Shown: positions 6,001-26,229 of the stretch, piece after piece
Position numbering within the stretch: position 1 is the first letter of the stretch
Layout: each line of letters opens with the position of its first letter
Source: Intoshia linei
Taxonomy: Eukaryota > Animalia > Orthonectida
NCBI GenBank assembly: GCA_001642005.1
Contig: LWCA01000054.1
Coordinates: 2,116-66,115, forward strand
Length of the DNA stretch: 64,000 nt
Direction of reading: 5' to 3'
Made by a program: the position numbers and the translations under genes
The notes under the pieces: model-generated
Databases searched by the model: none
The model's input: the letters and a program-made list of their open reading frames with translations, nothing else
Told to the model about the DNA's origin: nothing

Positions 6001-6995
6001 GGGAAATAAAATTGCGATGCTGCATCACCATTAAAAAACTCTATTACCAATAGGAATTTTTTTAAATAAACGATAACACACACACATAACATTTTATATA
6101 TGTAATGTATATTAGTTTTTTTGGGTTCACAGCTTTTTTTCAATATCATCGTAGGGTTCACAGTAAAAAAGAGTTGATAATGTCTGATTTAAAGCAGTGA
6201 TTCCGATTGTGCTTTCTGAGATTTAAATAAAATATAAAAAATTTTTATCAATTTTGTTTATAAATAATTTTTCATATATATTAGAGTTTTCGATGTATTA
6301 ATTTATCCTAAACTCTTGACGACCGCGACATTATAATCCCACTTTTATCCCACCATTAATAAAATTTAAATTTAAATAAAAAATATAATTTCAAACCTTC
6401 AGGAAAAAATCGACTTAAACCTAAATAAAAAATTCAATTTTACCAACCCTTAATGGAAAAATTCTTTTTTTCCAATATTTTTTTGAAACCACGATTTTAC
6501 TAAATCTTATGAGAAAAACGTTTAATTTTGTCATAAATGTTTAATATTTCATGTCCTTGGGGTCCAAAAATAATAAATTTTTTCAAATGGAGGTCCGTAC
6601 ATTATTTGAATCGGGAACTACTGATTTAAAGGAATGGTTCCCAACGTGTGAAGAAAATTTTTTATTTTTAAATTCTTGGACTATTAACTATATCAAATTT
6701 GTTGTTTTCTGTTAATGAAATAATTTCACAAAAAAAGTGTAAATTGTTTTTTTAACCATGAAGGCTTAACTTTGTTAAATTTAAACTTTTTATGGATGTG
6801 TATGTTCATATTTATAGTTTTTCTTTTAAATTTACGTTTTAACTTAGATTCAACAATAATTTTGGTGTATTGGGTATATTAGATAAATTACATGGTACAG
6901 ATATCCATTTTAAAAACTCGGATACTTACCAATATCACTATGTTAGCATGTGCTTAAAACCATTTGATCGAAAAGACTATAACAAATCGTTGTAA
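3046..6995 (+). CDS. FAXDC2: Fatty acid hydroxylase domain-containing protein 2 (sterol desaturase family), ~7 exons
   Basis: Spliced product contains WHIQRFWGISGNFW, YKIQP, the His boxes YYFHRLAHHP, HKQHHEW and HDYHH, YAHPIEH, and NNFGVLGILDKLHGTD. The last exon is 6848-6995. Confidence 0.93.
5217..6186. mobile_element. hAT-type non-autonomous element carrying a nested Helitron fragment
   Basis: Ends are CAGCCATTCTCAAC and GTTGATAATGTCTG. It is flanked by the 8-bp duplication ATTTAAAG (5209-5216, 6187-6194). Confidence 0.75.
6195..6623. mobile_element. Second hAT-type MITE, directly adjacent to the first
   Basis: Ends are CAGTGATTCCGATT and AATCGGGAACTACTG, flanked by ATTTAAAG (6187-6194, 6624-6631). 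Related sequence occurs at ~14260-14540 and ~24120-24629. Confidence 0.75.
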
Positions 6996-7352: not shown

Positions 7353-8506
7353 CTAGCTTGATTGTTATATACTATGTACATACAGCATTTAGCTCTGCCG
7401 AGAGCACATTTTTATAATACCAAAAAAATAAATTCATGTTGAAAATCTAACTTGAAAATCCTACTATTCACTATTATCAATCCTTTAAAAGAGTGGTTAT
7501 CTCATTTTTTTAATTTATTAGACAGAATGTGTGTATAATATTAAAAATGAAATAAAAACAGTCCAATCTCAAAAATTGTCATAAATAGCATAAATTCCAG
7601 AAAAAATTAAATTATAAAAACATATTTTGTTTGAAAAAAATTGCAAAGGAATGAATTATATAGATTTTCACCCATGTCTTTATTGGAAATGTGTAGACGT
7701 ACAATGCACATTTTTTTTAAATTGTAGGATCAATATTTACATTTTCAATTTTTGATTTTAATCGAAATGTTTGAAAAATATTGATTGATAATATATTAAA
7801 AATTATTTTTCACTTGGAATGCTTAGATTTCTGGGATTGATTTTGTATTTATATTAGCTGAAATAAGCTCTATCAGAATAATTTTTTTTTTAATTTTCGG
7901 ACCGCTAATTATTTCACATTTATTGTTTTAATAAAATAGTTCGGAAAAAAAATATATGAATACTAAAATGCTTTTTTGACCGTGAAGTCGTCACTTATTC
8001 AAATTGAAATTTTTTATGTGTGTTAACATAATACAACTCTACCACCTGTAAATTTTTTGAAATTCTAGAGCTGTTTGAAAAAAAAAGGGAATTTGTGGTT
8101 TTGGCCTTGAAGATATAATTTTTTTAAATTTAAATTTATGATAATGTTTATGATTTTAAAATCCGTATCAGCGTATATATTTTTTTAAATTCTCGAACTC
8201 GTTTGATTTTCAAAAAAAAGACAATTGGGATATATATTTTTTTAAATTCTCCAACTCGTTTGATTTTCAAAAAGAGGGACAATCATTTTTTTAAATTCTC
8301 TAACTAGTTTGATTTTCAAAAAGAGGGACAACATGGTTTTTGATTCGTAAGATGTGAAATTGGGAGGTTGAAATATATCTTATTATACGTCTCGTAAAAA
8401 ACTGTAATTTAAATGTGGCTTTAAAAAAATCTAAGAGTGGTAGTTATTTTAATAAAGTGAACAGACACACAAACAAAAATCGCGTAGCCTTTTATATAAG
8501 TTAGGA
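7353..8506 (-). mobile_element. Non-autonomous Helitron with both termini
   Basis: Minus strand reads A|TCCTAACTTATATAAAAGGCTACGCG..(TG)n....CAAGCTAG|T. This is a 5' TC and 3' CTAG between A and T with no TSD. A ~55-bp unit is triplicated internally at ~8175-8335. Confidence 0.85.
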
Positions 8507-10284
8507 TTTTATTTAATCAAAAATATTAAGATTATAGAAACAGCAATACAACTTTTAAACGCAAGGTTAAATTGCAATAAAATGTAAATTGTAATACAAA
8601 TTATAAAATTGATTAAAAAATGTAATTAAAATCTATTTTATCAAAAAATTAATTTTGTATTAAAAAATAAATTTACTAAATAGTAAATTAGTAAATAGAA
8701 TATAAAGAAAATTTTTTGTAAGCGTAATATACATATTCCCTTTTTTTAAATAAATGTATTATCCATCTGCGTTATTAAACATTTAAGTGTTCTGTTACAA
8801 TTTAGAAGCATTTTAAATTTCAACGTGATATAAAAGTTAAGTAGATAAATTTTCAAATTTTACGATTTCATCATAAAATCGAAATTAATTTTGAAATTGT
8901 ATTTTAAAATTTATATAAATGAGCGAGTAAGAGAATTGGCTAATAGTGTAGCGAATACTGTATTTTAAAAATAAGCAATATTTAATACATCTATTTCCAT
9001 TTAAAATATAAAAAAATTTTCAATGTTAAGTCAAGCCTTGATGTTCAAAAAACTAAGTTTCAGAATTCAAAAAAAGATTGCATTTACATGTTAAGGTGTT
9101 AATAGTTTTTTCCGTTAAGTTTCCATGTGAAGTTAAGGCTTCATGTCCAAAAAAGCAATTGACGGTTTACTCTTTTTATTGAGAAATTATTTCATTAACA
9201 ACAACAAAAAATTTAGTATTTAAAAATTTAATAAAAAAAGAAAAACAAAAATTTGATACAATGAATGGATCCAGAATTTAAAAATAAAAAATTATCCTTA
9301 CACTTTATGAAACCATTCATTTAAAAGATTTGCAATAGTGAATAGTATCATTTTTGTGTAAGATTTTATTTTTTTGGTATAATTAAAACAGTCTGCTCTA
9401 GCAGATCTAGGTGCTGCTTGTACAAAGTACAAAACAGTCAAGTTGATTTATTATAAAATTATATTTTTTTCAATAATTTTTTACTATTGGTCATAATTCT
9501 GAGGACTGCAGCTCATCAGTCCTTAAAAACGGGACGCCACTGATCATCAACCAATATTTTTCAAATTTTTAAAATTAAATTTAAAATCAAAATGTAAATA
9601 TAAATATTTATTTTACAATTTCAATAAAAATAATAGTAAAATTTTGAGATTTATTTCAAAGTAAACCAATTGAAAAAAATAAAAAAATTTAAACTGTGTT
9701 TGTTTCAATTGATTTAAGAAAGTTAACTGTATAGAGTTTTCAAAACGTCAATTTCGAATACAGTTTTTAATGGAAAATGAGGTTAAAACACCCATTATCC
9801 ATATTATTTTTTTAAATTAAAACCAAAACCAGAATTATAAAAAATACACAATATGATAAAAATTTTACCTTTTTAAATTTATTTGCAACTGTTGTCTATG
9901 TTTCTTAAAAAAACATTATTATCTCTCAATACCTCCATTGAATGTTGCTCTAACAAACGAAGTGACCGAACGTGGAATACACAGAGTCCAATACCATCGT
10001 GAAAGAGCGTCAGTCAAGGATATTGATGATTAATTATTACATTACAGTGTTAATCATCTTAAAAATTATAATAAATTTAAGTCTTTATTTATCAATTTAA
10101 ATGTTATTTTAAATTTTAATTAACATTATATGAATTGTAAATAACAATTTTAACAATTTAAAATTTACAGGATTTTATTAACGATTTAATTTCTCAAATT
10201 CTGGCAATTTACATTATTTAAATTGTATTTAATGTATATAATTTAGCAAAAATCCAAAAAATTGAGCTAGAAACAAATTTAAAA

Positions 10285-10639: not shown

Positions 10640-11220
10640 ATGGATGAAAAAACACAACATTTGATAGGTCGCATACCAGAACATACAATGAACATTGGAC
10701 CAAGAGATCATGATTTATGGGTAGATAGATTAAAGTCAGAATACATGTCAATTATAAAATATGTAGAAAATAACAAACAGGACGATAACGATTGGTTTGA
10801 AATAGAATGTAACAGTGATGGCACCAAATGGTTTAATTATAATATTATATTCATGACGTTAATTTAATTTCAATTAGGTTCGGAAAGTGTTGGTATATTC
10901 ACAATATGCAGCGTTACGAATTTAAAATGACATTTGATTTACCTGCTTTCTACCCATCAATTGCCCCAGAAATTTGTTTACCTGAATTGGACGGAAAAAC
11001 TGCCAAAATGTATAGAGGTGGTAAAATTTGTTTAACTGATCATTTCAAACCGCTTTGGGCTCGGAACGTTCCAAAGGTGAATATTTAATTTGTTGAGATT
11101 ATATTTTGACTGTAAATTTAGTTTGGAATAGCCCACTGTTTAGCTTTGGGATTAGCACCTTGGTTAGCTGTTGAAGTGCCGGAATTGGCGTCAAAAAAGT
11201 TAATTACTCCTGTTTCTTAA
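10640..11220 (+). CDS. UFC1: UFM1-conjugating enzyme (E2); exons 10640-10830, 10878-11076, 11122-11220
   Basis: [83 protein letters not shown]. The catalytic Cys is present. Confidence 0.97.
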
Positions 11221-11417: not shown

Positions 11418-14400
11418 ATGGATAAAATTATTTTCTTCAATTTAATTTTTCTTTTAATATTAAATAATATATGCGTCTGCGATGGTAAATGTTTTTAATG
11501 TAATTTAAATTTTTCCTCGTGTAGCAAACAATTGCAATATTAATTTCTGTGAAAAATGCGAAAAAGATAGTTTAACTTGTTTATCGTGCAAAGGAGGGTA
11601 TTTTTTCGACCAAGAAACTTTCAAATGTCAAAGTAATTATTTTAAGTATTAATTTGGTCAAAAATATTTAGAATGCATTAAAAATTGCGACACATGCGGT
11701 TATGTTGATCATTGTAATTTTTTCAATTTTATAAATAAAAAGAACATTTGGTAAAATAGGTACAATATGTAATGTTGGTTTTAAATTTAATTACCAATCT
11801 CGAAAATGTGAAAGTAAATTTTTTTGTACATTATGTATTTTGATTTCTTTATAAAGCTCTTAATATTAGGATGTGTTCCAAACTGTCAACATTGTAATGA
11901 TAATAAAACATGTACTAGCTGTTTGTCCAAGTTTTACAAAACTACAGATAAATACATTTGTTTCGGTATTATGAAGGTAAACTTTATAATAAATTTTTTA
12001 GCTTGTCCGAAAAATTGTAATCGTTGCAGCAATCCCACTGATTGTGTGGATTGTTTAAAAAATTTCTTTTTATTGGATCTAAAATGCTATGGTATAAAAT
12101 ATGTTGTAGTTTATAATTTACAAAATAATGCAAATTTTTATAAAATATATGCATTTGTAGAATGCTCTGAAAATTGTGACATTTGTGAAAATGTTGAAAA
12201 ATGTAATATATGCAAGTTTGGATATTTTTGGGACGCGCAAAATAAAAAATGTACATGTAATGTTTACGTAATTTATGGAATCAACATTTTACACTTTTTA
12301 TGTTTTACTTTGAAATACTAGCTTGTGGAATCGGATGTCTCTCAGGTCAGTGTGATTTAAAGCTTGGATGTCTAAAATGTAAAAACGGATACATGATTGA
12401 TTTGCAAAAATGCAAAAGTATAAAAATTGACTGAATAATTATATTATAATATAATCATAAATACTGTTTATAACAATTAATAAATAATCGAATATAAATT
12501 ACTCTTATTAATAATTGTATTGATAACATTTGAGATTATTTAATATTACCTGTTTTCGAAATATTTTAAATGGCGCAATTTGCTTAGTCACAAATTAAAA
12601 ATATTTCAATTTCATTTTACATTTGTTATATATTTTTTTATTATTTAAAAGAATGTGCAATATTGGAATCGCACAATTGTAATACATGTGTAACTAGCCA
12701 GTTCGGGAATATGTGGCATGGAACAAAATGCATTAGTAATTTAGTCTTTTAAATTTACAATTACAATTATAGAATGTTTGCAATACTGTTCTAAATGTAC
12801 TAGTTCAAATTCTTGTATTATAAATGATCAAGACATGTGTTTGGAAGATTACGCTTTTGATGACAACGCAAAATTATGCAAAGGTAGTTTTTTAATATAT
12901 CGATTTCTGAGGCTAATTTTAAGCTAGGAATAAAAAATACTTGTTTGTTTCTACTGAAATAATTATTTTTTTGGGAATATTTCGATCTAGTATATTTTAT
13001 GTCATAGGCCGAACTAGGGAATTTCATTATTTCTTTTTTTATTTTCTAAATAATGGGTCATTTTGGGTTTTGACCGTGAAAGTGTCGATTTTTGAATTTT
13101 ATCTTGCTTTATGCGTCAGAAACATATAAGTTGGAATTTTTATTTTTTAAATTTGTGAGACAGACAGTTTTCTTTTGACAGAAAACACATTTTGAACAAC
13201 TTTTACTTTATATTTATACATTATACAATCTGCATCTATACTATAATTATAATATTAGTTTGTATCAGTTTAATTACCGATATGAGTGGATTATACAATT
13301 ATGAATCTAGTTGTTTGAAATGCAATGGGTTTTATTACTTGAATGGCATTTGCTCTGGTATATCCGTTTTATTAGAAATTAATCTGTTCTTATTTAGCGT
13401 GTACAACGGATCATTCAATTAAAGAAAAATGTCCATGTATTGATCGAGAAAATTTTTACACCGCTAAAAGTTTTTGGATAGAAACAAACGTGTGTAGAGG
13501 TAATTTAATTTTTTTATTCTTTTATTTGATTCAAAATTGTAAGTTATTTATTGTGAAACATACATGGTTCAGAAGGTCTTGTCTGCCGTAACAAACGAAG
13601 ACGAATGCAATTTTTGTGCTGGTTACTATTTCGATCCAACTTTGAAACAATGCAAAGGTATACTTTAATACAATAATACGCAATTTATTTACTAAGAGAT
13701 CAATTATAACTAAAATGATAATTCATGGGCTAAAATTCATAGTGCATTATAATAAGAGTAATCAAAAAGGTTAAAAAAACTACCTAAATATTATAAATGG
13801 TAATTGTAGTTTTAAAAAAAATATAGTTTACGGCGATTGCCAAAATAGTTGAAATGCTTTTTTCAGAAAAGATTTTTAAATTAAAATTTTAAATTAAATA
13901 ATAAATTCTTGAACCTAACATGATTAATATTTTGATTAATTCTATCACAGATACTGGTTGGGTTTAATAAATTTAAAAAATAAAATTCAATATTATAAAG
14001 ATGAATACAAAATGTAAATGTATAGTATAATTACTCGTACAATATTAAAAATTGTATTTATTTAAAAATGCAAGCTAATTCCTAAGATTGGGGTTCAAAA
14101 TTATTGTTTGATGATCGGTGCGATTCAAATTAAATATAGAAAAATTTTGATCAACTTTTGTTTATTTTTAAGGGTATTTTTTTATATTTATGACAGAGTT
14201 TCTAGATGTTAATTATCCCGAATCCTAGACGACTGCTACATTACTATTTCAAAAATCCTAGATTTATCCCACCATTAATAAAATTTAATAAAAAATACAA
14301 TTTCAAGCCCTATGGAAAAATTGACTTTTACCGATATTTTTTTGAAAAACCCGATTTTACGAAACCTTATGAAAAAAATCCAAAATAAAAAATCCAATTT

Positions 14401-17400
14401 TACCAAATCTTATTAGAAAAATCTCATATTTCAACCATCATATACAACTCCAATATTACCAATCGTTAAGGGAAATATTCTCTTTTCCCAATATCGTTTT
14501 GAAAAATCTTATGAGCAGTAATTTCCTAATCCAAAACCAAAAATAAAACTTAAAAATCTTACTATTGACTAGTATCAATCCTTTAAAGGAGTGGTTCCCA
14601 AAAATGTTTCGGGTGGATCACATTACTTTTTACTTTAAAGTGAATTATTCCATCTTAATTTTTTTTGTTAACACATTTGTGTAAAAGAATTATAAAAATA
14701 ATTGTTATCCTATTTGTTTTATTTATTAGACAGAATGTGTGTACATTTTACAATATTAAAAATAAAGTGAAAACAGTCCAATCCTAAAAATTGTCATTAA
14801 TAGCATAAATGCCAGAAAAAATAAAATTTTGTCATTTTCAATGATATAATATATTTTCGGTATCAATTTAATAAATACTTAAAAATTCCAATTAAGTATC
14901 AATAATTAACGGAATCAGCACTTTATAAACATATTTAGGTGGATTTTACCAATACTGCAAAGGATTGTAATAAATATAAAAATGATAATAACAAAGTTGT
15001 ATTACTTTTAGTAATCGTTGTTGTAGTTTTAATTTAAATTTTAAACAAAAATTTTTGAAAATGAAATTTGAAATTTAAAAATTGCGTAGCTATAAAAAAA
15101 ATTCCGAAGGAATGAATTATATAGATTTTCACCCATATTTCTTTATTGAAAATGTGTAGAGGTTCAATACACATTTTTTTTTTTGAAATTGTAGGATCAA
15201 TATTTACATTTTCAATTTTTATTTTAATCGGATTTATTTAAAAAATATTGGAAATACTAATATTAATTGACTATTTTTCTACATTGAACCATTTATTTAG
15301 CTGTATTGTGTTTGGAATATTCAACAATAATTAAAAAAATAGAATGTGATGCATGCAGCAATTTATTTTATGATACAATAACTGCATCTTGTAAAGGTAT
15401 ATTATAAATGGTTTTTATTCAATTTATTTTATCTTAAAGCATGGGTTCTTATCTTAGGGTGCCAGAAATTTATTTTATAAATATCACTATAATAATTTTA
15501 AATTTTAATTTAATTTATTCGAAATTAAGTTTATTAGAACGGGCACAGAACAGTAAGTTACATGAGGGACAGTTGTTTTGTTATTTAAATGTAATTCTAT
15601 TTAATTTTCAGAATTGACCTGTTCATTGGTTAATCTTAATTCATTGGAAAATACAACCACAAGAATAATTGCCATAAGTAAATGCAATGATTTCAAACAC
15701 GGAATATATTTGGACCCAAAAACTAAATTAGCTAAGAGTAAACTCAATATTTCATTTTAATCATTATTTAGAAATTGACTGTCAAATTTCCCTATTAACA
15801 ACTGATAAAATTGAGTGCGAGTCATGTATAAGCTATTATTGGGATATATACGCAAATAAATGCCAAAGTAATGTACAAATTTGTTTAATTATTAACATTG
15901 ATGAACAATTATTCTATTATTATTTATTACCTATTATAATTATATTATGTAATATTAAGATATTAATATAATATACATTCAAAAACAACCTTAAAAAAGA
16001 TAATTTTATTGTCAAAAACCCAGATTACTATTTTTTGTAAAAATGAAAACAGCCCGTGTATCGATTGAATACACATGTAAATTTGACTTGGAAATTGACT
16101 TGGAAACTTTAAGCTGTACTAAAATTGATCAAAGAAATCTTTTTAGAAAAAATTAAATTAACCCAAGAAATGAAATGCATAAGAATATGTGGAATCTTGA
16201 TTCTAGAATGTGACAAATTTTTATTAAATTTATTATTTTTATCTTTTTGCAACACATTATATTTGAAGTGACACAGGGAGTATCAATAATGTTTTTTTAA
16301 AATATAATTATATTTTAGAGCTATTGTGTAATAATCAACCATTAAATTCTATGGAAAAGTGTCAAGGGTGTAATAGATTGTATTCTTCAAAAAGTGGATC
16401 ATGCTTTAGTAATTTACTATTTAATTCAGTATCCGACAACCAGGGAGGAAAGATTCATTATTGGGAAATTTAATTTATGAAATTTACACTAAATCATTTT
16501 TCCGATTTTATCCCATTAGGTTAAAAATGTTCTTAACCTTTTTCCACTTGGCACCCTTAATTCAATAAAATTTAAGTTTAAAAAATATAGCTTTGAAATA
16601 ATTTTTATTCAAAAATTATCTGACATTTAAAACTGGTTTGGCACCTCAGGTTAAGAACCCATAACCTAATGTCTTTGACCAAAAGTTGACCAAAATTTTC
16701 AGTATTTACAACTATTTTAATCGAGTCACCCCTTTCAATATGGGTACGCGATATTAAGATTTAATAAATAAATTAATAATAAATAATAAGATATTAATTA
16801 AGACATAATTGATTTAATTATAGAATGTCCTGATAATGCCATATCGTGTAACCTGTTTGAAAGCATTTGCAAGAATAATTATTATTTTGATCAGAAAACT
16901 TGGACATGCATTCGTAAACAATCTAATTAATATTAAATATTGTATCAATTATTTATTTGTTTAGTTGCCAATTGTCAAGCTTCAGATTTAAAGAAAAATT
17001 GTGTCAGTTGTCTCACATTTTATTGGAACAAGGAGAAATGCAATAGTACAATACATTCAATAAAATTTATATTTTACTTGTAGAATGCCCCGAAAATTGT
17101 CAAGTATGCCAAAATTCAATTTCATGTGTTAGGTGTAAAACCAACTATGTTTGGTCTGCAGAAGATAATTCTTGTGTTTGTACGTTATATATCAATGCTT
17201 CATAAACTGGGTTCATATAATTTGTTTCTAAAGTTTTAAAAAAAATTTTTTAGTTTACAAATAATTTTAAATCTACTTAGAGTCGAACCTACCGAACAGG
17301 AAACCTCTCTTAGGATATCGACAAAGGTTTTTTAAATGGGCCTCATTTTTTCATAATTGAGCAAATTTTACAATTTTACAAATATATTGTATTTTAATCT

Positions 17401-20400
17401 TAAATTGTCAACTCTAGTCCGGTGCCAGAAGTTAGGGGTAAAGGTTGGTATGGCTACAATGCATTATGTATTGTTTGGAGAAAATTTTTGATGACCTAAT
17501 TTAGATTTTAAGGGATCCTGATTGGGTATTTAACATGTTGGGCTCGTTTCAGGGCATACTTTTTTGTAACTTATGTATTCTTTTACAAATCATAATTAAT
17601 GTTGGATATGTATTAGTGTGCATCTTGAAAGTAAAGGACGAGTGTGCTCAATGTTCAACGCCATTGGAACCATTTTATTTATCTGATTTGCATCAAAAGT
17701 GTCAATGTAATCAAAATACAATTATGTACAATGTAAATTGTACATTATATTAAATTGATTGTAATTTCAATTTTTAAATAATCTAATTAGTATGCAAACA
17801 TGCAGCTATTGATGATATATTGACAGAATCAATGTGCCATGAATGTGGACCAATTAAATTAAAAACTGGAATATATTGGGATAGTTCTGTAGTACCGCGT
17901 TGTAATGGTAAAATATTATTACATGTACAATTTATTAAAACTTATTATAATATTATAATAGTATATATGATATATAGTTTATATAATAATAGTTTATTTT
18001 AATAATGTATATTACTATATGGTATTAAGTACATAAGGGAATCAACTTTTTTAATTTTGTTGTTTATTACTTAGGTAGGTAGTTTTAAATAAATTTAAAA
18101 TATTTTTTAAGCATATTACAATAAAAAATTTTAAAAAAAATTCAGAAGCAAAGTCAAAATAAATCTTTTTATACCCTACCACGAAAAAAGTATTAAAACT
18201 GGAATAACTACTTAGTACATCTTTTGTTTTTAAAATTCTTTACGAAAATGTTAACAAAACAAAATTAAGATGGAATAATTCTTTAATTAATAAACTTTAA
18301 AGTAAAAAGTAATATGATATGATGGTTCCACCTGAAACAAGTTTGGGAACCACTTTTTTAAAGGATTGATAATAATGAATAGTAGAATTTTTAAGTTGGA
18401 TTTTTGACGTAAATGTATTTTTTTGGTAGAATAAAAATGTACCCTCGGCAGAGCTACGTGCTGCTTGTACGTAGTACATAACTGTCAACCTAGTGTATTT
18501 ATAACTAGCAATATTCTCAATAAATATCTAATAAAAAATAATAATTGAATTAGTGTAATTATCTCATTGGCCACTCGATTATTTTATTATTTTTTTCGGT
18601 GATGTTGAAATATAACCTTAAATATTATTAAAATATTGTTTATAACCCAAACTTTTTTTGAGTGTTGTGCAGTATTATAGAAAACGAATCCATGATATGA
18701 ATAATACTCTTTTTTTTTTAAAAGGGGCATTTAATTTTTTGGCCCTAAATAACTCAATTTCTGAAAATGAAATTTACGATAAAATATCACTTTTGAAAAA
18801 TTGTATGAGAAATTTGGTTTTTTTAATTCTAGGACTATTAATTTTTTGATTAAGCAGTAGAACCGACATAAAGACTTTACATCTTATAAAAGTAAAGGAT
18901 TGCTAGTATTTTGTAATTATTTATGATGGATATATAGCGAGTGGTCAGTGGCCACTAATAGAAATAATCTAATGTATTTTCATTGACCAATTTCAATCAG
19001 TATTGTTAATATTCTGAAATTATTTAATATTGTACTTTTATCTAGGTTGTATTGATAACTGCTTATATTGTAATAAAACTGATACGTGTATTGAATGCAG
19101 AACGCATATGTATTTTAAACCCAAAAGTGACGACGAAAAATCTGTATGTTTGGGTAAAAAAATATAAAACTTACAAATATTTAATTTAAATTAGATTGTT
19201 TAAAAAATTGCAAAAAATGCAAAAATTCTCAAACATGTGATGAGTGTAATCAAGGATATTATTACAGTACACAAGACTCTGAAAATAAATGCTTATGTAA
19301 TTTTTATTATAATTTAACGCCTAAGTATTAGTAAGTTAGTACACTATCTCAATGATTAAAATTTAATATTTTCTTAAGGGTTGTGGAAACACAATTTTCC
19401 TGACAAAAATTGGACAAAATTAGATTAATAAAGCAGCATTTTTTTAATACGAGGTAGTGAAAAATTTTTACCGGTCTGCGAAATAATTAGAAGTCAATTT
19501 ATTGCTTTAATGAAAATTTAATGTTTCCTCGTAATTTCACTTTATTGGTCCGCGATAAAAAATAAAAATTTAAAATTTTAATTGATAATTTATCACCATA
19601 TAGTTACTATGTGATATACATCTGATTTAATAATTGCTTTTATATTAGCTTGCCCTCAGAATTGTATTTCATGTGCGAAGCCAACGACATGTATTCAATG
19701 TAAATCACAAACATTTGCAGATTATGAAACTGGAGAATGTTTCGGTAAATTTTTTTAATTTACAAAAATACTTAATTAATTTACTATTAATTAAATTTAT
19801 TAACAAAAAAATAAAATAACATTTAATGTTTAGAATTTTTTATGTTTATTTTTAAACCCAAGAAATTTTTTTAATGATGTGATGTGACCCTTTTTATTAA
19901 GGGTCCACTTTAAATTGGATTGGAATTTTTCTCATAAATTTTTTTTTTCAATAATAAATTGTCATTTTTTACTGTAACCCTTATTTTTCGTGTAAATGAA
20001 CAATGTTATAATTCTCAACATAATTTTTTTTATCATGTCTTTTCTTCTTTTTTGGCGAACATTCAGTTGAGCGATGTATTGTTAGAACGATATATCTTAG
20101 AACAACATAATCATATATTTTGCTAATTAATCATATTATTGATTTTTTCACATAATTTTTAAACATTTTTAAGATAATTTTGGGATCAATATGTGGTAGG
20201 GTTTTTAAGGGAAGTTTTTTTTTAATACAATTTTTAAAAATTTTTAGGGGTAAATTTTTACCCTTTTAGCAGTAGGGAATATTTTTAACATTTTAAGGTT
20301 TTTCAAAATCTTTAAAAATTGCTTAAAAAAAAGCTTCCCTTAAATACCCTACCAAATTATTTTAGAAAAATCTTTAAAAATTGGGTAAAAAAAATTGTTC

Positions 20401-23400
20401 CCATTAAAACTCTTCAAAATATTTGTAGAAAAATTATTATAAAAATTTTTAAAAATTAGTTTAAAAAAAATTCCTTAAAAACCCTACCAAATTTATCTTC
20501 AAAGTCTTTATAAATTTTCCCTAAAGTCCTCAAGTCTGAAGTGTGATATTTTGTTGATAAGTATTTCATAAGTACTTATTTATAAATGTGTGCCGTTTTT
20601 GTAGATTACCCTTAAATTAGTCCCACAAAAAAAATTTTAAAAAATCCATAATATAATAAATTAGTATAATCGATGATTATGTTGTTCCATGATGTATCGC
20701 TCCAACAATACATCGCTCTAGAGAATGGACGTCTCTTTTTTAGCACGGTGACACTATCAAAATCTGAAATTATTTTAGCGCCACGGGATATACAAATATA
20801 TATTTATTATTTGTTTATGTATTTAAAAAAACATTGTATAATGGGATATATTTTTTTTGTTTGAAATGTAGATTACTCTGTAAAAAAAAATTGTCATTTT
20901 TAGAATTCTATGAAATTGTAAATATTAAAAATAATCTGTTTAAAAAAATATGAAAATTTGCACTATATTATACTTTTTTATAAATTTAGATTGCATTAAA
21001 TATTGCAAATATTGTAACACAAACAATAAATGCACAACATGTGACAATGGATTTTATTTAATTTCAAATTTACAAGAATATGAATGTGTCGGTAATAAAA
21101 TTGGATATTATTAAAATTTATTAACATGTACATGTAAATGTAAATACAAGTACAATAAATAATTATTTATTATAATAAATACAACAGTATTTAAGTAAAT
21201 TTATTAATACAGCGAATGTACTTGTATTATTTATAATAAAAATTAAAATTAAAGCTTGCCCTATAAATTGTTCAACTTGTTTGGAGAAAAATTGCTTTAC
21301 TTGTGATTTCGGTTATTGTTTAAATGAAGCCAATTTGTGTACAAGTAATTTTTTTAAATAAAATAAGTGTTATTTGTCTAATTGTCAGAGTCAAACCTAG
21401 CTATCTCGAGGCCATCGAAAATGAAAAATAGGCACTTAAAAAAAATTTTCAACAACTATTCATTGCGACATACAGCCCTAACAACGTCTCTAAGGTTCTT
21501 CACTTGATATTTTGAATTTAACACACAAAATAGTTATGATATTCCAGAATAATATTTTTAATGCTTAATTTTAAAAAATGAAGGCCCCATTTTTCAAAAA
21601 TTTCGCCGCCCCCCCCCCTTCCCTCACCGAAGAACGGTCTCGGTATGGTAGGTCGTTGCTGATAATAGTATTTGAATATTATTGTACAATGTATATCCAT
21701 ACTACTTAAATTGTATGTATTTGTTGTAATAAAAAAATAACTTAATAATTAATTAATGACTTGTATATAATATAATTACATATTATATCACATTTTACTT
21801 TATTTACACTTAATCAGAAAAATTTAGAAAATGATAATAATTGTAAAACATGTAAATACGAAAGTGGAATTGCTCCAATACTTTCTTGTACGAGCTGTTT
21901 CAATGGATATGAATTTGAAATTTGTAAAAGTAAACGTTTAAGTATACAATGTATAAATTATACTATAGTATTATAATACTAGATGTATAATATACATTGT
22001 ATATATAGTAGTAAAATTTTAACTAGCTTTGCAGTTATGTACTTCGTACAAACATCAGTTAGCTCTGACGAGATCTACTTTTTAATTTTAAAACGGATTT
22101 TTTTACTGAAAATTGAAATTTGAAAAATATTTGAAGATATTGGAAGATATATATTAAAAGTTATTTTTGACCGGCCATCCGTAGGATTCTGCGGTTCACA
22201 TTTTATCTCTAGATCAACTGGAATAATCTGTATCAGAATAAAAAATTTTTTAAATTCTACGAGTTTTAGTTTTCCGAGAGTAATATTTCATATCAAATTG
22301 AATTTTTTACAAAACAAAAAATTAATTTATCCTTTTTTTAAAAATAAAATCAACTCTTGAATTTCAAAAAACCTAAATGCCAGGACGTGTTTTACAATTA
22401 TTAATATGTTCATAAATATCAACCTTAGAAACTTACATTTTCATGGCCATAACCACAAATTACCTTTTTTTTATAAATAAAAAAGTTATATGATTTTAAT
22501 AAAACACATTTTAAATTTAAATTTTAAAAGATTAATTTCACAAATTGACGCTTTCACGGTCATAAAATCAACATAATATTTATTTTATTATTTGGTCATT
22601 ATTTTTTTAAAACAAAAAATATGAAATAAATGTTAATTTTTTAATAAAACCGTAACACACAAACATTTAATTTATGCAATAATTAATAATAATTAAAAAT
22701 TTATAATATATTAATTAGAATGCCCAGAAAATTGCGATCTTTGCAACGATAATAATTGTATATATTGCGTAAAGGGTTTTTATTTGGATAAAACATGCTT
22801 TAGTAAATCTTACTTACTTTTTATACATTTTAACATAAAAGTAGAGTCTTTCTTATATTGGTAGACTCAAAATTTTAATTTTTTTATTAAATCTACACAA
22901 AAATCACAACTTTTTGGGTTATCTTGTGTAAATGTTTTTAAACTTTAAAATTCTTAAAATCTCGTGTCACCATTGGTGACTCAACAATACAAAAAATACA
23001 AGAACCACTTTTTTAATTGTTACCTTTGTAATAAAAAAGATTTGGACAATTTTTATACTATACATTTATGTGATAATTTAAAACTGTTAGAATGTGCCGA
23101 AAATTGCATCGAATGCAATACAGCTACAGATTGTGTTAAATGCAAAACTAGTGTAATGGTTTTCGACGAGTCATTGCTCAAATGTGTGGGTATGCTTTTT
23201 TTATACTATTTTTCAAAATGTTTTAATATGTTTAATAGAATGTCTTCAAAATTGTATCGAATGTGTCACTTTTAATAAATGCTTAAAGTGCTTTGATAGC
23301 TATTTTCTAGAAAATGATGTTTGCAAATGTTAGATTTTTTGAAATATATTTAAATAATTTTTCTGTTTATTCATTAATAATAAAATAATCATAGTATAGC

Positions 23401-26229
23401 TTGTCCAATTAATTGCAAAAAATGCGAGAGCAAATCATCGTGTCGAGAATGTATAAAATATGGGATGAATTTTATTGAAACAAAAAATAAGTGTATAGGT
23501 AATATTTATCTTTATTAATATTAGCAATCTTGATTAGAATGCAGTCCAAATTGCAAAGAGTGTTACAACGATGAAAAATGTCTAATTTGTGATGATTATT
23601 CTTATCAAGATTTTACACAAATTGATTCTGTTTGTTTAGGTATGTTTAAGACATATACTTATATATTTGTATATCCTTACTTATATAGTATGCCACGCAA
23701 TATTTGTTTGTGTGTGTGTTCCAGTTTATTTCAAAACTACAAGTCTTAGAATTTTATAAAGTCCACATTTCAATTACAGTGTTTTCCGAAGGATTGATAA
23801 TAGTGAATCGTAGGATTTTTAAGATTCATTTTCAAAGTGAATTTATTTTTTTGGTATAATAAAAATGTGCCTCCGGCAGAGTTAGGTGCTATTTCCACAT
23901 AACAGTCAACCTAGTTACATATATAGCGGTGTTTGCTATAAAGCAGGGCTGGGAAACTTTTTGTACTATCGACGTTATTTTTTTAAAGATTTTATAGATT
24001 CATTTAATAAATTCTGGGATACCGGTTTAGTAAATAAATGGTTACACAAACACAAATACATTTTTAGAAACTTTTACGTTACATGAATAAGGATGTGATA
24101 TCTGATTTAGAGATTGCTGATTAATCCCACCATTAATAAAATTTAATAAAAAATAGCTTCAAAGAAAAATTGACTTTTACCGATATTTTTTTGAAAAATC
24201 CGATTTGATTAAATTTTATCAGCAACAACTTCGTCATCCAAAACCCTAAATAAAAAGTCCAATTTTACCAACCTAAATTAAGGGAAAAATCACCTTTTTC
24301 TAATATTTTTTTTCAAACATCCGATTTGACCAAATCTTATGAACAACTTTGTAATCCAAAACCCTAAATAAAAAATCCAATTTACCAACCTAAATTAAGG
24401 CAAAATCCACTTTTTTAAATAATTTTTCGAAAAATCCAATTTATCAACCTAAATTAACGAAAAATCACCTTTTTCTATTATTTTTTTAAAAAACATGATT
24501 TACCAAATCTTATGAGAAAAAACCTTTAATTTTGTCATAAATGTTATATATTTCATGTTTCCTTTGGGGTCCAAAAACATAAACGTTTTGAAATGGGGGT
24601 CCATACACTATTTGAATCGGTAACCACTGATCTAGATGCTTATTTATTTAGATACTTTCAATGGGACCCCGTGTCGCGTACTGTTAATTAACGAATTTTT
24701 TTCTTTCTCACAAAAAATGAATAAAAATGCATAATTAATGTCTACTCTCCATTTCAACATTTTACCACGAGATAGCCATTACAGCCAGAATATTAAATTG
24801 TAGTGTATTAATTTTATTTGCATTACTAAAAAAAATTTATCTTAAAATGTCAAAATTTCAAAGAACCACAAATTTTTCAAACCCCAATGCTGCGCGCATT
24901 CCGTTTGAGATCCACTGGTCTAATAATTAAAAATTTAGCTTGTAAAAGTAAAATTGATCATTGCAATAAATGCTTTGTTAAGGATAATAATTTACTTTGT
25001 ACCGAGTGCGAGAAAGGATTTACCACGAGAGATGATTTTAGAAGTTGTACTAGTAATTTTGAACTACTTAATTGAAAATTTTAAAAGTATTAATTTTACA
25101 ATTTTATATTTCAGAATGTGAAGTGAGTTGTAATTCGTGCATTGATAGGCCATCAATTTGTTTAGAATGTCAAAAACATTACTTTCTGAGTTTGGATAAA
25201 TCGTATTGTGGATACAAGCAATGCTATGAATGTAATTTCGAAAAAGATGACAACTGCAATATACCCTTAAAAAACCAAACATTGAATGGATGTTTGCATG
25301 ATTGCTCGGTATACCTTTATATAGACATTTCTAAAATTTGATTCTCTCTGAAAAAGTATAGAATTAACAATTACAGTTTATTAAAAATTAAGAAATGGCG
25401 TTACGAACATAAACTCTTGTACTTTATGTTACGAATAAAACAATTAACTAATTTAATATTTATCTAACCCTAATCACTTTTTAAAGACTCTTGACTTGAC
25501 ATTTTGACTTTAAAACGTAAAATAATCGATATTCAAGAGTAGATATTTTTTTAATGTTCAATTTGAAAAAAGGAGGGGGCTTTTTACAAAAGTTTAATCG
25601 AGAACTCGTACAGAAAGGTCTCGGAGTACGGTAGATTCGGCACTGCAAAAATTACCACTAAAAATATGAATAATAAAATTTCTATGAAAATACAGAAACT
25701 ATAATACCCTTTTCTGGAGCCTCAACGAAATTATTGTATGATGGGTCTCATTTTCTCAAATTTCATAAATTATATTTTAATTAATAAATTTATAGTTTAA
25801 ATTCTAAAATGTTGAACTATCTTCTTGACCGGAAGAATCAAATTTCTGAGAATTAAATTCATGATATTTTTTTCACAATTTATTGACATTGTTCGAGTTT
25901 TTGTGTGCAAAATTTAAAAAATTAGAATTATGAAATTATGTATTCGTCCATTTTTAGACGAAATCAATACTGGGCAATGTTGTTGAAAGATCATGCAGCA
26001 CGTTTGATTGTACTGCAATTAACCTAAACGTATGCGAATTTAAAAATGAGGTAATGAAGGATTGATAAAAATAACCGAGTTTTAGATGTGTGAGCACTGT
26101 TGCAGTTCACATAAATGCAATAATATGATTTCATCAGCAATGCATTTAAACGGGATTTACACTGCGAATTTTAACATTTTATTTATAGAATTAATAATAA
26201 TAAGTATATTTTTATTTAAGTGTGATTAA
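11418..26229 (+). CDS. Large Cys-rich cell-surface protein: signal peptide, ~33 furin-like/VSP-like CxxC repeats, Ly6/uPAR (three-finger) domain, hydrophobic GPI-like tail; ~37 exons
   Basis: Exon 1 (11418-11484) is MDKIIFFNLIFLLILNNICVCD. Exon starts traced at about 11525, 11672, 11760, 11870, 12002, 12161, 12322, 12652, 12773, 13259, 13399, 13544, 15301, 15612, 15772, 16319, 16823, 16965, 17084, 17617, 17791, 19046, 19195, 19649, 20990, 21255, 21828, 22719, 23091, 23239, 23400, 23538, 24939, 25115, 25958 and 26086. All use GT-AG and stay in frame (e.g. CPENCQVCQNSISCVRCKTNYVW). The protein ends CCSSHKCNN..FNILFIELIIISIFLFKCD*. Confidence 0.88.
14550..15260 (-). mobile_element. Helitron internal fragment in an intron of the Cys-rich gene
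   Basis: Shares ATCAATCCTTTAAAGGAGTGGTTCCC, AAAAATTGTCAT and GAAGGAATGAATTATATAGATTTTCACCCAT with the 7353 and 44944 copies. Boundaries are approximate. Confidence 0.7.
18225..18493 (+). mobile_element. Helitron 3' fragment
   Basis: Ends GTACGTAGTACATAACTGTCAACCTAG|T, a hairpin followed by CTAG. Confidence 0.75.
20054..20733. mobile_element. Long-TIR (foldback-like) MITE, superfamily uncertain (Mutator/Merlin-like)
   Basis: Imperfect inverted termini of ~60 bp (GGCGAACATTC..GAGCGATGTATTGTT..AACAACATAATCAT and ATGATTATGTTGTT..AACAATACATCGCTC..GAATGGACGTC). It has an 8-bp direct flank TCTTTTTT and internal inverted subrepeats (CCCTACCAAA). Confidence 0.7.
21386..21661. mobile_element. hAT-like MITE (CAGAGTCGAACCTAC family)
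   Basis: Ends are CAGAGTCAAACCTAG and GGTAGGTCGTTGCTG, with a degenerate 8-bp flank (CTAATTGT/ATAATAGT). Related ends occur at ~17280, 25640, 39250, 44682 and 52740. Confidence 0.55.
23674..23914 (+). mobile_element. 241-bp mini-Helitron (internally deleted, both termini retained)
   Basis: A|TCCTTACTTATATAG..TTTGTTTGTGTGTGTG....ATAACAGTCAACCTAG|T. Confidence 0.85.

What the first reader, a model, noticed from the sequence alone, without database searches (positions are those of the whole stretch)
11418..26229. VSP-like surface protein built from ~33 symmetric cassette exons: a candidate splicing-based antigenic variation system
Seen in sequence: exons 2-34 are ~40-125 nt and all are bounded by phase-1 introns. 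Nearly every one encodes a single divergent CxxxCxxC..CxxC..aromatic..C module, so any subset can be skipped without breaking the frame. A signal peptide and a hydrophobic tail flank the array. Established knowledge: tandem CxxC repeats with a membrane anchor are the layout of Giardia VSPs, ciliate immobilization antigens and Entamoeba Igl, and symmetric micro-exon genes (schistosome MEGs) make variant proteins by exon skipping. Inference: this animal gene may combine both to build a variable surface coat. Caveat: phase 1-1 exons are also normal for shuffled extracellular modules, so symmetry alone does not prove skipping.
Basis: partly seen in the sequence, partly recalled or inferred. Interest (0 to 1): 0.85.

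Follow-up and report, generated by a model that had tools for sequence, protein, structure and literature searches.

The report
Orthonectid GPI-anchored furin-repeat surface protein gene
This is a real 37-exon gene of the parasitic worm Intoshia linei for a long cysteine-rich surface protein, one of at least 13 related genes, but nothing shows that it varies its coat by skipping exons.

Summary
At 11418-26229 (+) I rebuilt a 37-exon, 1219-aa open frame with no internal stop. Exons 2-34 are 42-126 nt, all multiples of 3, all bounded by phase-1 GT-AG introns, and mostly encode one Cys module each. The gene is public: OAF71400.1, a hypothetical protein of Intoshia linei. That annotation misses the true last exon.

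New here:
- The array ends in a Ly6/uPAR-like domain and a GPI-type tail.
- The modules are furin-like (R-spondin/insulin-receptor type) repeats that no Pfam model detects.
- The gene belongs to a family: modules lie on at least 17 contigs and the same terminal exon at 13 loci. First-stage notes of this scan describe similar genes elsewhere in this genome.

The splicing idea is unsupported:
- Module order is conserved position by position in 8 paralogues.
- One module is split across exons 3/4, with a Cys coded at the junction.
- Exons 27/28 carry a conserved 7+5 Cys pair.
- One paralogue has about 29 modules fused in two giant exons.
- 48 of 561 skip junctions would create a stop.
- Close paralogue pairs give dN/dS 0.14-0.30.

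Best reading: a constitutively spliced GPI-anchored surface rod. Any diversity lies in the gene family.

The parts
11418..11484 (+). Exon 1: start codon and signal-peptide-like MDKIIFFNLIFLLILNNICVCD; ends in phase 1
   Evidence: same start as public protein P0001
11525..11632 (+). Exon 2, 108 nt, phase 1-1, 6-Cys furin-like module
11672..11713 (+). Exon 3, 42 nt, phase 1-1: first half of a module
   Evidence: the junction codon with exon 4 encodes Cys
11760..11813 (+). Exon 4, 54 nt, phase 1-1: second half of the same module
11870..12417 (+). Exons 5-8 (11870-11965, 12002-12091, 12161-12256, 12322-12417): four 6-Cys modules, phase 1-1, separated by introns of 36-69 nt
12652..12735 (+). Exon 9, 84 nt, 4-Cys module (CAILESHNCNTC...), position-specific type also seen in paralogues
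12773..12883 (+). Exon 10, 111 nt, 6-Cys module
13259..17045 (+). Exons 11-19 (13259-13357, 13398-13499, 13544-13657, 15301-15396, 15612-15737, 15772-15867, 16319-16408, 16824-16913, 16965-17045): central block of reduced 4-Cys modules; exon 15 is degenerate with 2 Cys; all phase 1-1
17084..17179 (+). Exon 20, 96 nt, 6-Cys module
17617..17907 (+). Exons 21-22 (17617-17706, 17791-17907): 4-Cys modules
19046..21091 (+). Exons 23-26 (19046-19153, 19195-19296, 19649-19744, 20990-21091): 6-Cys modules
21255..21929 (+). Exons 27 (21255-21344, 7 Cys) and 28 (21828-21929, 5 Cys): a linked pair with odd Cys counts, conserved as 7+5 in at least 5 paralogues
22719..25052 (+). Exons 29-34 (22719-22802, 23091-23189, 23239-23328, 23400-23498, 23538-23639, 24939-25052): 6-Cys modules, phase 1-1
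25115..25308 (+). Exon 35, 194 nt, phase 1 to 0: last furin-like module, then the start of the Ly6/uPAR-like domain (from 25216, KQCYEC...)
25958..26050 (+). Exon 36, 93 nt, phase 0-0: middle of the Ly6/uPAR-like domain
26086..26124 (+). Exon 37, first part: end of the Ly6/uPAR-like domain, MCEHCCSSHKCNN (CC-x4-CN signature)
26125..26229 (+). Exon 37, rest: GPI-type signal (small residues ISSA, spacer, hydrophobic ILFIELIIISIFLF) and TAA stop
   Evidence: absent from public model P0001

Best explanation
The locus is an intact Intoshia linei gene, publicly annotated as hypothetical protein OAF71400.1. It encodes a secreted protein that is most likely GPI-anchored. The layout is a signal peptide, a rod of about 33 furin-like cysteine-rich modules (6-Cys types at both ends, a block of reduced 4-Cys types in the middle), one membrane-proximal Ly6/uPAR-like three-finger domain, and a GPI attachment signal. 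It is one member of a lineage-specific family of at least 13 genes with the same architecture. The one-module-per-exon, phase 1-1 structure is best read as the trace of how the array was built, by tandem exon duplication before the family expanded. All modules are most likely spliced in constitutively. Shown here: gene structure, open frame, family size, collinearity of modules, and terminal exon conservation. Inferred: GPI anchoring, surface location, constitutive splicing, and a coat or adhesion role on the parasite's outer cell surface.
For: The 37-exon model has no stops and agrees with P0001. The only hydrophobic stretches are at the two ends. The terminal exon xCExCC..D.CN + ISSA + hydrophobic tail + stop occurs at 13 loci. 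Language-model features of the paralogue's C-terminus point only to UPAR_LY6/QVR/Toxin_TOLIP clusters, scores 0.91-0.92. The module profile best matches R-spondin-2 FU repeats (E 0.011) and the insulin-receptor CR region. An AF2 model of 10 paralogue modules has pLDDT 90.3, and its best structural neighbours are R-spondin Fu1-Fu2 (Foldseek prob 0.93-0.97; VIA Z 5.5, rmsd 3.2 A over 56 residues), then IR and ErbB CR domains. Modules lie on at least 17 contigs. Eight paralogous loci are collinear with this gene module by module: z 3.1-6.8, at most 1 of 300 permutations reaches the observed score, and an unrelated FU gene on C261 gives z 0.1. The intron-poor paralogue C1055 has the array plus LU plus tail in ORFs of 525 and 585 aa, collinear with exons 7-35. 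The split module and the 7+5 Cys pair need neighbouring exons together. dN/dS is 0.14-0.30 in three close paralogue pairs.
Against: No RNA evidence of any kind was obtainable, so constitutive splicing is inferred and not seen. Pfam finds no family in P0001 or in the 585-aa paralogue ORF. The furin-like assignment rests on borderline scores (E 0.011, Z 5.5). The LU fold could not be modelled: single-sequence AF2 gave pLDDT 47.5. No GPI predictor was run. The dN/dS values cover only the C-terminal 43-167 codons of other family members, not this gene's array.
Confidence: 0.7

Rival explanations
1. One reading: the 33 symmetric exons act as cassettes, and combinatorial exon skipping produces variant surface coats from this one gene.
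For: All of exons 2-34 are phase 1-1 and multiples of 3, so skipping keeps the frame. 513 of 561 skip junctions are stop-free. The protein looks surface-exposed, and the organism is a parasite.
Against: Symmetry is expected for exon-duplicated extracellular modules. Module order and position-specific types are conserved in 8 paralogues. Exons 3/4 and 27/28 are not autonomous. A paralogue has the array fused into two exons and cannot skip. Splice sites are uniformly strong. There are no near-identical alternative exons within the gene: the highest module identity is 56%.
Confidence: 0.07
2. Family-level variation: the 13 or more paralogues form a variant surface coat used by switching or mutually exclusive expression, as with Giardia VSPs or ciliate immobilisation antigens. 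This gene would be one constitutively spliced variant.
For: It is a multigene family with a shared scaffold and strongly diverged loops: 36-39% identity between matched modules, 23-28% outside Cys. Some pairs are more recent, and some copies appear to be decaying. The layout is GPI plus CxxC repeats. The closest database proteins are ciliate VSP-type proteins.
Against: Thirteen to about twenty old, diverged genes is a small repertoire. dN/dS of 0.14-0.30 shows no diversifying selection where it was measured. There are no expression data. The hosts are invertebrates without antibody-based immunity (my knowledge).
Confidence: 0.15
3. It is a diverged orthologue of a conserved animal furin-repeat protein (PCSK5-type Cys-rich region, R-spondin, FRAS1-like matrix protein) with an ordinary signalling or matrix role.
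For: The modules are furin-like. A separate PCSK-type FU-repeat gene exists on C261.
Against: phmmer against 1.84 billion representatives found only 11 hits at E<=0.001, and no animal protein besides the gene itself was identified among them. The full-length search found only protist-type VSP proteins. There is no protease, TSP or other partner domain. The FU array + LU + GPI architecture is shared by the paralogues but matches no known animal protein that I could find.
Confidence: 0.05
4. The contig is protist (for example ciliate) contamination of the assembly, which would explain the VSP-like hits and the 25% GC.
For: The nearest sequence relatives are ciliate proteins, and GC is low.
Against: The standard genetic code is used: long ORFs without in-frame TAA/TAG and a TAA stop. 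The neighbours are ordinary genes: UFC1, a WD40 protein, a pogo-type transposase. An LU domain is present, which is an animal-type domain (my knowledge; the named look-alike clusters were all from animal phyla). The same gene type lies on at least 17 contigs with the same intron style.
Confidence: 0.02

Closest known systems
Furin-like cysteine-rich repeats (FU) of R-spondins, insulin/ErbB receptor CR regions and PCSK5/6
   Same: The module consensus C-x2-N-C-x2-C-x4-5-C-x2-C-x2-G-Y/F...C matches R-spondin-2 Fu repeats. The predicted beta-hairpin rod superposes best on R-spondin Fu1-Fu2, then on IR and ErbB CR domains.
   Different: No Pfam FU model scores. There are about 33 tandem copies, one per exon. 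A third of them are a reduced 4-Cys form. There is no receptor, protease or TSP partner domain. The array is GPI-anchored through an LU domain.
Giardia variant-specific surface proteins (Pfam VSP, PF03302) and VSP-type proteins of ciliates
   Same: CxxC-rich tandem modules on a surface protein, in a multigene family. The closest database proteins carry PF03302 (28-31% identity, E about 1e-21).
   Different: The VSP model scores below threshold: 11.2 bits against a cut-off of 31.4 on a piece, and nothing on the whole protein. The C-terminus is LU + GPI rather than TM + CRGKA. The gene has 36 introns and belongs to an animal.
Ciliate immobilisation antigens (Paramecium, Tetrahymena, Ichthyophthirius) and Entamoeba Igl
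   Same: The layout is signal peptide + periodic Cys repeats + GPI anchor, in a gene family. This comparison comes from my knowledge and was not tested beyond layout.
   Different: The repeat unit differs, those proteins have no LU domain, and mutually exclusive expression is not shown here.
Ly6/uPAR (LU) GPI-anchored proteins such as CD59
   Same: The C-terminal ~85 residues (25216-26124) have C-x2-C at the start and CC-x4-CN at the end, followed directly by a GPI-type signal. ESM features of the paralogue's C-terminus point to UPAR_LY6/QVR clusters.
   Different: There are 12 Cys rather than 8-10. Neither Pfam nor the PDB sequence search gives a match. The domain sits at the base of a rod of about 1100 residues instead of standing alone.
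Schistosome micro-exon genes (MEGs)
   Same: Runs of symmetric exons whose skipping would keep the frame.
   Different: MEG exons are 6-36 nt and do not encode folded modules (my knowledge). Here the exons are 42-126 nt, and each is a disulphide-bonded module or half of one. Skipping is documented for MEGs and untested here.

Membership tests
Giardia VSP (PF03302) | Scores above the Pfam gathering threshold | tested here: not met
   P0001 gives no family at E<=0.1. The 167-aa piece scores 11.2 bits against a cut-off of 31.4. The 585-aa paralogue ORF gives none.
Giardia VSP (PF03302) | C-terminal transmembrane helix followed by the conserved CRGKA tail (my knowledge) | tested here: not met
   The C-terminus is ...CNNMISSA...ILFIELIIISIFLFKCD, a GPI-type end. 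The tails at all 13 loci end at or within a few residues of the hydrophobic stretch.
Furin-like repeat (FU; PF00757 / PF15913) | Match to the family profile | tested here: not met
   No Furin-like hit in P0001 or in the paralogue ORF.
Furin-like repeat (FU; PF00757 / PF15913) | Cys spacing and sequence resembling solved FU repeats | tested here: inconclusive
   The profile of 32 modules against PDB sequences gives R-spondin-2 at E 0.011 and insulin receptor CR at E 0.08.
Furin-like repeat (FU; PF00757 / PF15913) | Disulphide-bonded beta-hairpin rod fold | tested here: inconclusive
   The AF2 model of 10 modules of paralogue C1055 has pLDDT 90.3. Top neighbours are R-spondin Fu1-Fu2 (Foldseek E 0.03, prob 0.93-0.97; VIA Z 5.5), IR and ErbB CR; no match reaches E<=0.001. 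The model is of a paralogue, not of this gene.
Ly6/uPAR (LU) domain | 8-10 or more Cys in about 80 residues, with N-terminal C-x2-C and C-terminal CC-x4-CN | tested here: met
   KQCYEC...CEHCCSSHKCN, with 12 Cys, across exons 35-37. The same pattern occurs in at least 6 paralogues.
Ly6/uPAR (LU) domain | Match to UPAR_LY6 or a related Pfam profile, or to a solved LU sequence | tested here: not met
   No Pfam hit at E<=1. phmmer against the PDB finds no LU protein.
Ly6/uPAR (LU) domain | Three-finger fold | tested here: inconclusive
   Single-sequence AF2 gave pLDDT 47.5 and is unusable. ESM-Atlas features are nearest to UPAR_LY6, QVR, Toxin_TOLIP and Activin_recp clusters, scores 0.91-0.92 with 171-182 shared features. 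That is a lead only.
GPI-anchored protein | C-terminal signal: small omega residues, polar spacer, hydrophobic end, no cytoplasmic tail | tested here: met
   Judged by pattern only: ISSA / ISNA / VSSS, then 6-12 residues, then 12-17 hydrophobic residues before the stop, at 13 loci. Hydropathy peaks only at the two ends. No dedicated predictor was available.
Schistosome-type micro-exon gene | Most of the CDS in symmetric exons of 36 nt or less (my knowledge) | tested here: not met
   Exons are 42-126 nt.
Schistosome-type micro-exon gene | Transcript variants made by exon skipping | not testable with these tools
No transcript-derived proteins turned up in the protein collections.

The most novel reading that the evidence does not exclude
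The 13 or more FU-array + LU + GPI genes form a variable surface coat of an orthonectid, an animal counterpart of Giardia VSPs and ciliate immobilisation antigens. Variation would come from paralogue choice, possibly supplemented by skipping of the symmetric exons.
Probability: 0.15. Interest if true: 0.8.

Novelty: new variant of a known kind. Interest (0 to 1): 0.45.

Why it matters
Orthonectids are extremely reduced parasitic animals, and how they interact with the host is essentially unknown at the molecular level. This 41.6-Mb genome keeps at least 13 large genes (this one is 14.8 kb; the few others that could be sized are of similar scale) for GPI-type, cysteine-rich surface rods. That family is an obvious candidate for the parasite-host or ciliary surface interface. 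The architecture, a long furin-repeat array resting on a Ly6/uPAR domain, does not appear in the literature I could search. The practical gains are a corrected gene model (the public one lacks the GPI tail), a defined family, and a clear RNA test. The more exciting claim, antigenic variation by splicing, is not supported by any evidence available here.

Tried and rejected
- Pfam on eight exon or ORF pieces, on P0001, on the 585-aa paralogue ORF and on the last exon gave nothing at or near threshold.
- The search for homologous proteins with the 167-aa read-through ORF found nothing.
- phmmer of P0001 and of the LU region against PDB sequences gave nothing useful.
- Single-sequence AF2 of the paralogue's last module + LU gave pLDDT 47.5 with spurious helices and was discarded.
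- Alignment A3 (LU fragments, exon by exon) was mis-stacked by MAFFT. A4 (shifted 3-module windows) aligned only to itself. Neither was used.
Several paralogues are therefore only partly covered.
- Simple best-hit mapping of paralogue modules was noisy. I replaced it with an order-preserving chain score tested against permutations.
- Rfam found nothing in the window.
- Literature searches for Intoshia with cysteine-rich, surface or GPI terms, and for furin-like repeat with Ly6, found no description of this family. The genome paper (PMID 27374341) is not held.
- Joined model: the spliced 1219-aa model was never sent to any search, fold or family tool. Searches used single exons by reference, the stop-free read-through ORF 11818-12318, the public protein P0001 returned by a tool, and stop-free ORFs of paralogue C1055. 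Exons were joined only inside local scripts, to count stops, compare with P0001 and compute hydropathy.
Full report
**The window and the organism.** The window is about 25% GC throughout. It lies on contig C2509 of a 41.6-Mb assembly in 3520 contigs. phmmer against 1.84 billion representative proteins returned one strong hit, P0001. A cluster look-up identifies it as OAF71400.1, 'hypothetical protein A3Q56_00828 [Intoshia linei]', 1278 aa, on a 66,115-bp contig. The gene is therefore an already deposited but uncharacterised gene of an orthonectid, a highly reduced parasitic animal. Its neighbours are ordinary genes: a UFC1 exon about 330 bp upstream (Pfam E 1.6e-28), a WD40 protein and a pogo-type transposase fragment.

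**Checking the observation.** I enumerated every AG...GT interval in phase 1-1 that contains cysteines and read the two ends by eye.
- This gave a 37-exon model from the ATG at 11418 to the TAA at 26227-26229. It has 3660 coding nt, 1219 aa, no internal stop and 187 cysteines.
- Exons 2-34 are 42-126 nt, every one a multiple of three and every one phase 1-1.
- Exon 35 goes from phase 1 to phase 0. Exons 36 and 37 are phase 0.
- All introns are GT-AG (35 of 36 donors GTA, acceptors mostly TTAG). Twenty of the 36 are 34-84 nt; the rest are 163-1643 nt.
- The strict 6-Cys motif occurs 16 times in the window, only in this gene and only on the + strand. It occurs 0 times in 20 shuffles.
- The model is identical to P0001 over residues 1-611 and most of the rest. 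P0001 differs by four in-frame extensions that look like retained intron sequence, and by a different, shorter last exon.

- Only 19 of the 33 symmetric exons (20 modules, counting the first part of exon 35) carry the 6/7-Cys module. A central block (exons 9, 11-19, 21-22) is mostly a reduced 4-Cys form, exon 28 has 5 Cys, and exon 15 has only two Cys.
- Exons 3 and 4 together form one module, and the codon split across their junction encodes a cysteine.
- 48 of the 561 possible skip junctions would create a stop codon at the split codon, so 'any subset' overstates the case.

**The C-terminus.** After the last module, exon 35 continues with KQCYEC... Together with exons 36 and 37 this gives a 12-Cys stretch of ~85 residues ending in CEHCCSSHKCN. 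That is the C-x2-C ... CC-x4-CN pattern of Ly6/uPAR (LU) domains. It is followed by ISSA, a polar spacer and a hydrophobic end.
- Hydropathy shows only two hydrophobic segments in the whole protein, residues 1-23 and 1199-1219.
- The same terminal exon (xCExCC..D.CN, small residues, hydrophobic tail, stop) aligns across six family members. A profile of it finds 13 loci in the genome, all of which I read.
- Pfam does not recognise the domain, and neither does a PDB sequence search. A single-sequence AF2 model was unusable, with pLDDT 47.5.
- ESM-Atlas features of the contiguous copy in paralogue C1055 are nearest only to UPAR_LY6, QVR, Toxin_TOLIP and Activin_recp clusters. Scores are 0.91-0.92 with 171-182 shared features.

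I take the LU + GPI reading as likely but not proven. The public model P0001 lacks this tail.

**What the modules are.**
- Pfam finds nothing in P0001.
- A profile of 32 modules, each given exon by exon by reference (A1), best matches R-spondin-2 furin-like repeats (E 0.011) and the insulin-receptor Cys-rich region (E 0.08) among PDB sequences.
- A 310-residue stretch of ten modules from paralogue C1055 was folded with a 20-row alignment and gave pLDDT 90.3, all beta-hairpins.
- Its best structural neighbours are R-spondin Fu1-Fu2 (Foldseek E about 0.03, prob 0.93-0.97; VIA Z 5.5, rmsd 3.2 A over 56 residues), then the Cys-rich regions of IR, IGF1R and ErbB. Chlamydomonas mastigoneme protein also appears at the top of the Foldseek list.
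- None of these matches is individually significant, but all point the same way: furin-like repeats.
- The closest full-length proteins in 5.8 billion sequences are protist-type proteins carrying Pfam VSP, from Pseudocohnilembus, Tetrahymena, Paramecium and unnamed sources. They are 28-31% identical at E about 1e-21. No animal relative was found.

**The family.**
- Module-profile hits lie on at least 17 contigs, and 13 loci have the LU/GPI terminal exon.
- In the fetched loci the paralogues show the same anatomy: one module per phase 1-1 exon with TTAG/GTA splice sites and the same LU exon partition.
- For eight loci, an order-preserving chain of module matches to this gene's exons scores far above permuted module orders. 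z is 3.1-6.8, and at most 1 of 300 permutations reaches the observed value.
- As an example, the 17 modules of C30 map to exons 16, 17, 20 and 22-34 in order.
- An unrelated PCSK-type FU gene on C261 gives z 0.1.
- Position-specific oddities are conserved. The pair corresponding to exons 27/28 has 7 + 5 cysteines in at least five other paralogues.
- Matched modules are only 36-39% identical, or 23-28% outside Cys columns. That is barely above unmatched modules within the gene, so most duplications are old.
- A few pairs are closer (C30/C2714, C1791/C1716, C1651/C1426), and some copies have lost cysteines.
- Over the C-terminal 43-167 codons of these three pairs, dN/dS is 0.14-0.30.

**The intron-poor paralogue.** On C1055 the same protein type is encoded by two giant open frames of 525 and 585 aa. 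Together they hold about 29 modules, the LU domain and the GPI-type tail, with no intervening introns. They are collinear with exons 7-35 of this gene: z 2.8, with 1 of 100 permutations reaching the observed score. In that gene the modules cannot be skipped. The full tandem array is therefore a functional form of the protein. If the introns were lost through a cDNA intermediate, which is inference, the template mRNA contained the modules in full order.

**Interpretation.** The gene encodes a long furin-repeat rod resting on an LU domain, most likely GPI-anchored on the outer face of a parasite cell. It belongs to a lineage-specific family. The symmetric exon structure is what tandem exon duplication of an extracellular module leaves behind. 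The conserved module order, the non-autonomous exon pairs, the uniformly consensus splice sites and the fused paralogue all argue that the array is a fixed architecture and not a set of interchangeable cassettes. None of this excludes some exon skipping. If the family has a role in variation, the evidence points to paralogy and not to splicing, and even that is speculative. The repertoire is small and old, selection is purifying where measured, and no expression data exist. First-stage notes of this scan describe the same kind of gene on other pieces of this genome, and the LU domain on this window. They are unverified and agree with what I found.

**Literature.** Full-text searches for Intoshia with cysteine-rich, surface, GPI, Ly6, EGF or expansion terms found no description of this family. 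Nothing combined furin-like repeats with Ly6. The genome paper itself is not held. I therefore rate the family as undescribed as far as I could check: a new variant (a new domain combination and a lineage-specific expansion) of known kinds of protein.

Noticed in passing
L020 (G000:C1055:3000-12999), minus strand, ORFs 8245-9822 and 5202-6947: An intron-poor paralogue. About 29 furin-like modules, the LU domain and the GPI-type tail sit in two giant exons of 525 and 581-585 aa, whereas the other family members have one module per exon. Possibly intron loss through a cDNA intermediate.
   Followed up: partly
window 26086-26229 compared with public protein OAF71400.1 (P0001): The public gene model uses a different last exon and lacks the conserved CC-x4-CN + GPI-type tail. 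It also contains four in-frame insertions (61, 11, 14 and 4 aa) that look like retained intron or shifted splice sites.
   Followed up: yes
L035 (C1791:1-2979) and L037 (C1716:15750-17950); also L036 (C1426:36596-39724): C1791 and C1716 form a recent pair, 88% aa identity over 101 codons. The C1716 copy and the C1426 copy have lost conserved cysteines in the LU exon, which suggests decaying family members.
   Followed up: partly
L024 (G000:C261:20000-29999), minus strand: A different furin-repeat gene with spacing CxxxCxxCxxxxxxCxxC (PCSK5-like), also one repeat per phase 1-1 exon. It is not collinear with this family (z 0.1).
   Followed up: partly
window 24186-24493 and 20305-20467: Tandem repeats inside large introns: a 118-bp unit x2.2 (with nested 30- and 59-bp periods) in intron 33, and a 62-bp unit x2.4 in intron 25. 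I did not check whether they are dispersed elements.
   Followed up: no
window 10906-11088 (+): An exon of UFC1 (Ufm1-conjugating enzyme 1; Pfam E 1.6e-28) lies only about 330 bp upstream of the start codon, so the promoter region is very short.
   Followed up: partly
window 1637-2335 (-): A 232-aa ORF with HTH_Tnp_Tc5 and the start of a DDE_1 domain: a fragment of a pogo/Tigger-type transposase.
   Followed up: partly
window 56021-59893 (+): A single uninterrupted 1290-aa ORF with only a weak UBC_like match at its C-terminus (E 5.6e-5). It is unusually long and intron-free for this window.
   Followed up: no
model m861ae2a5aa70 (L020:5847-6776:-): The top two Foldseek rows for the furin-repeat rod were Chlamydomonas mastigoneme (ciliary hair) proteins, at E about 0.02 with a low TM-score. 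This is a weak lead, but orthonectid adults are ciliated.
   Followed up: no
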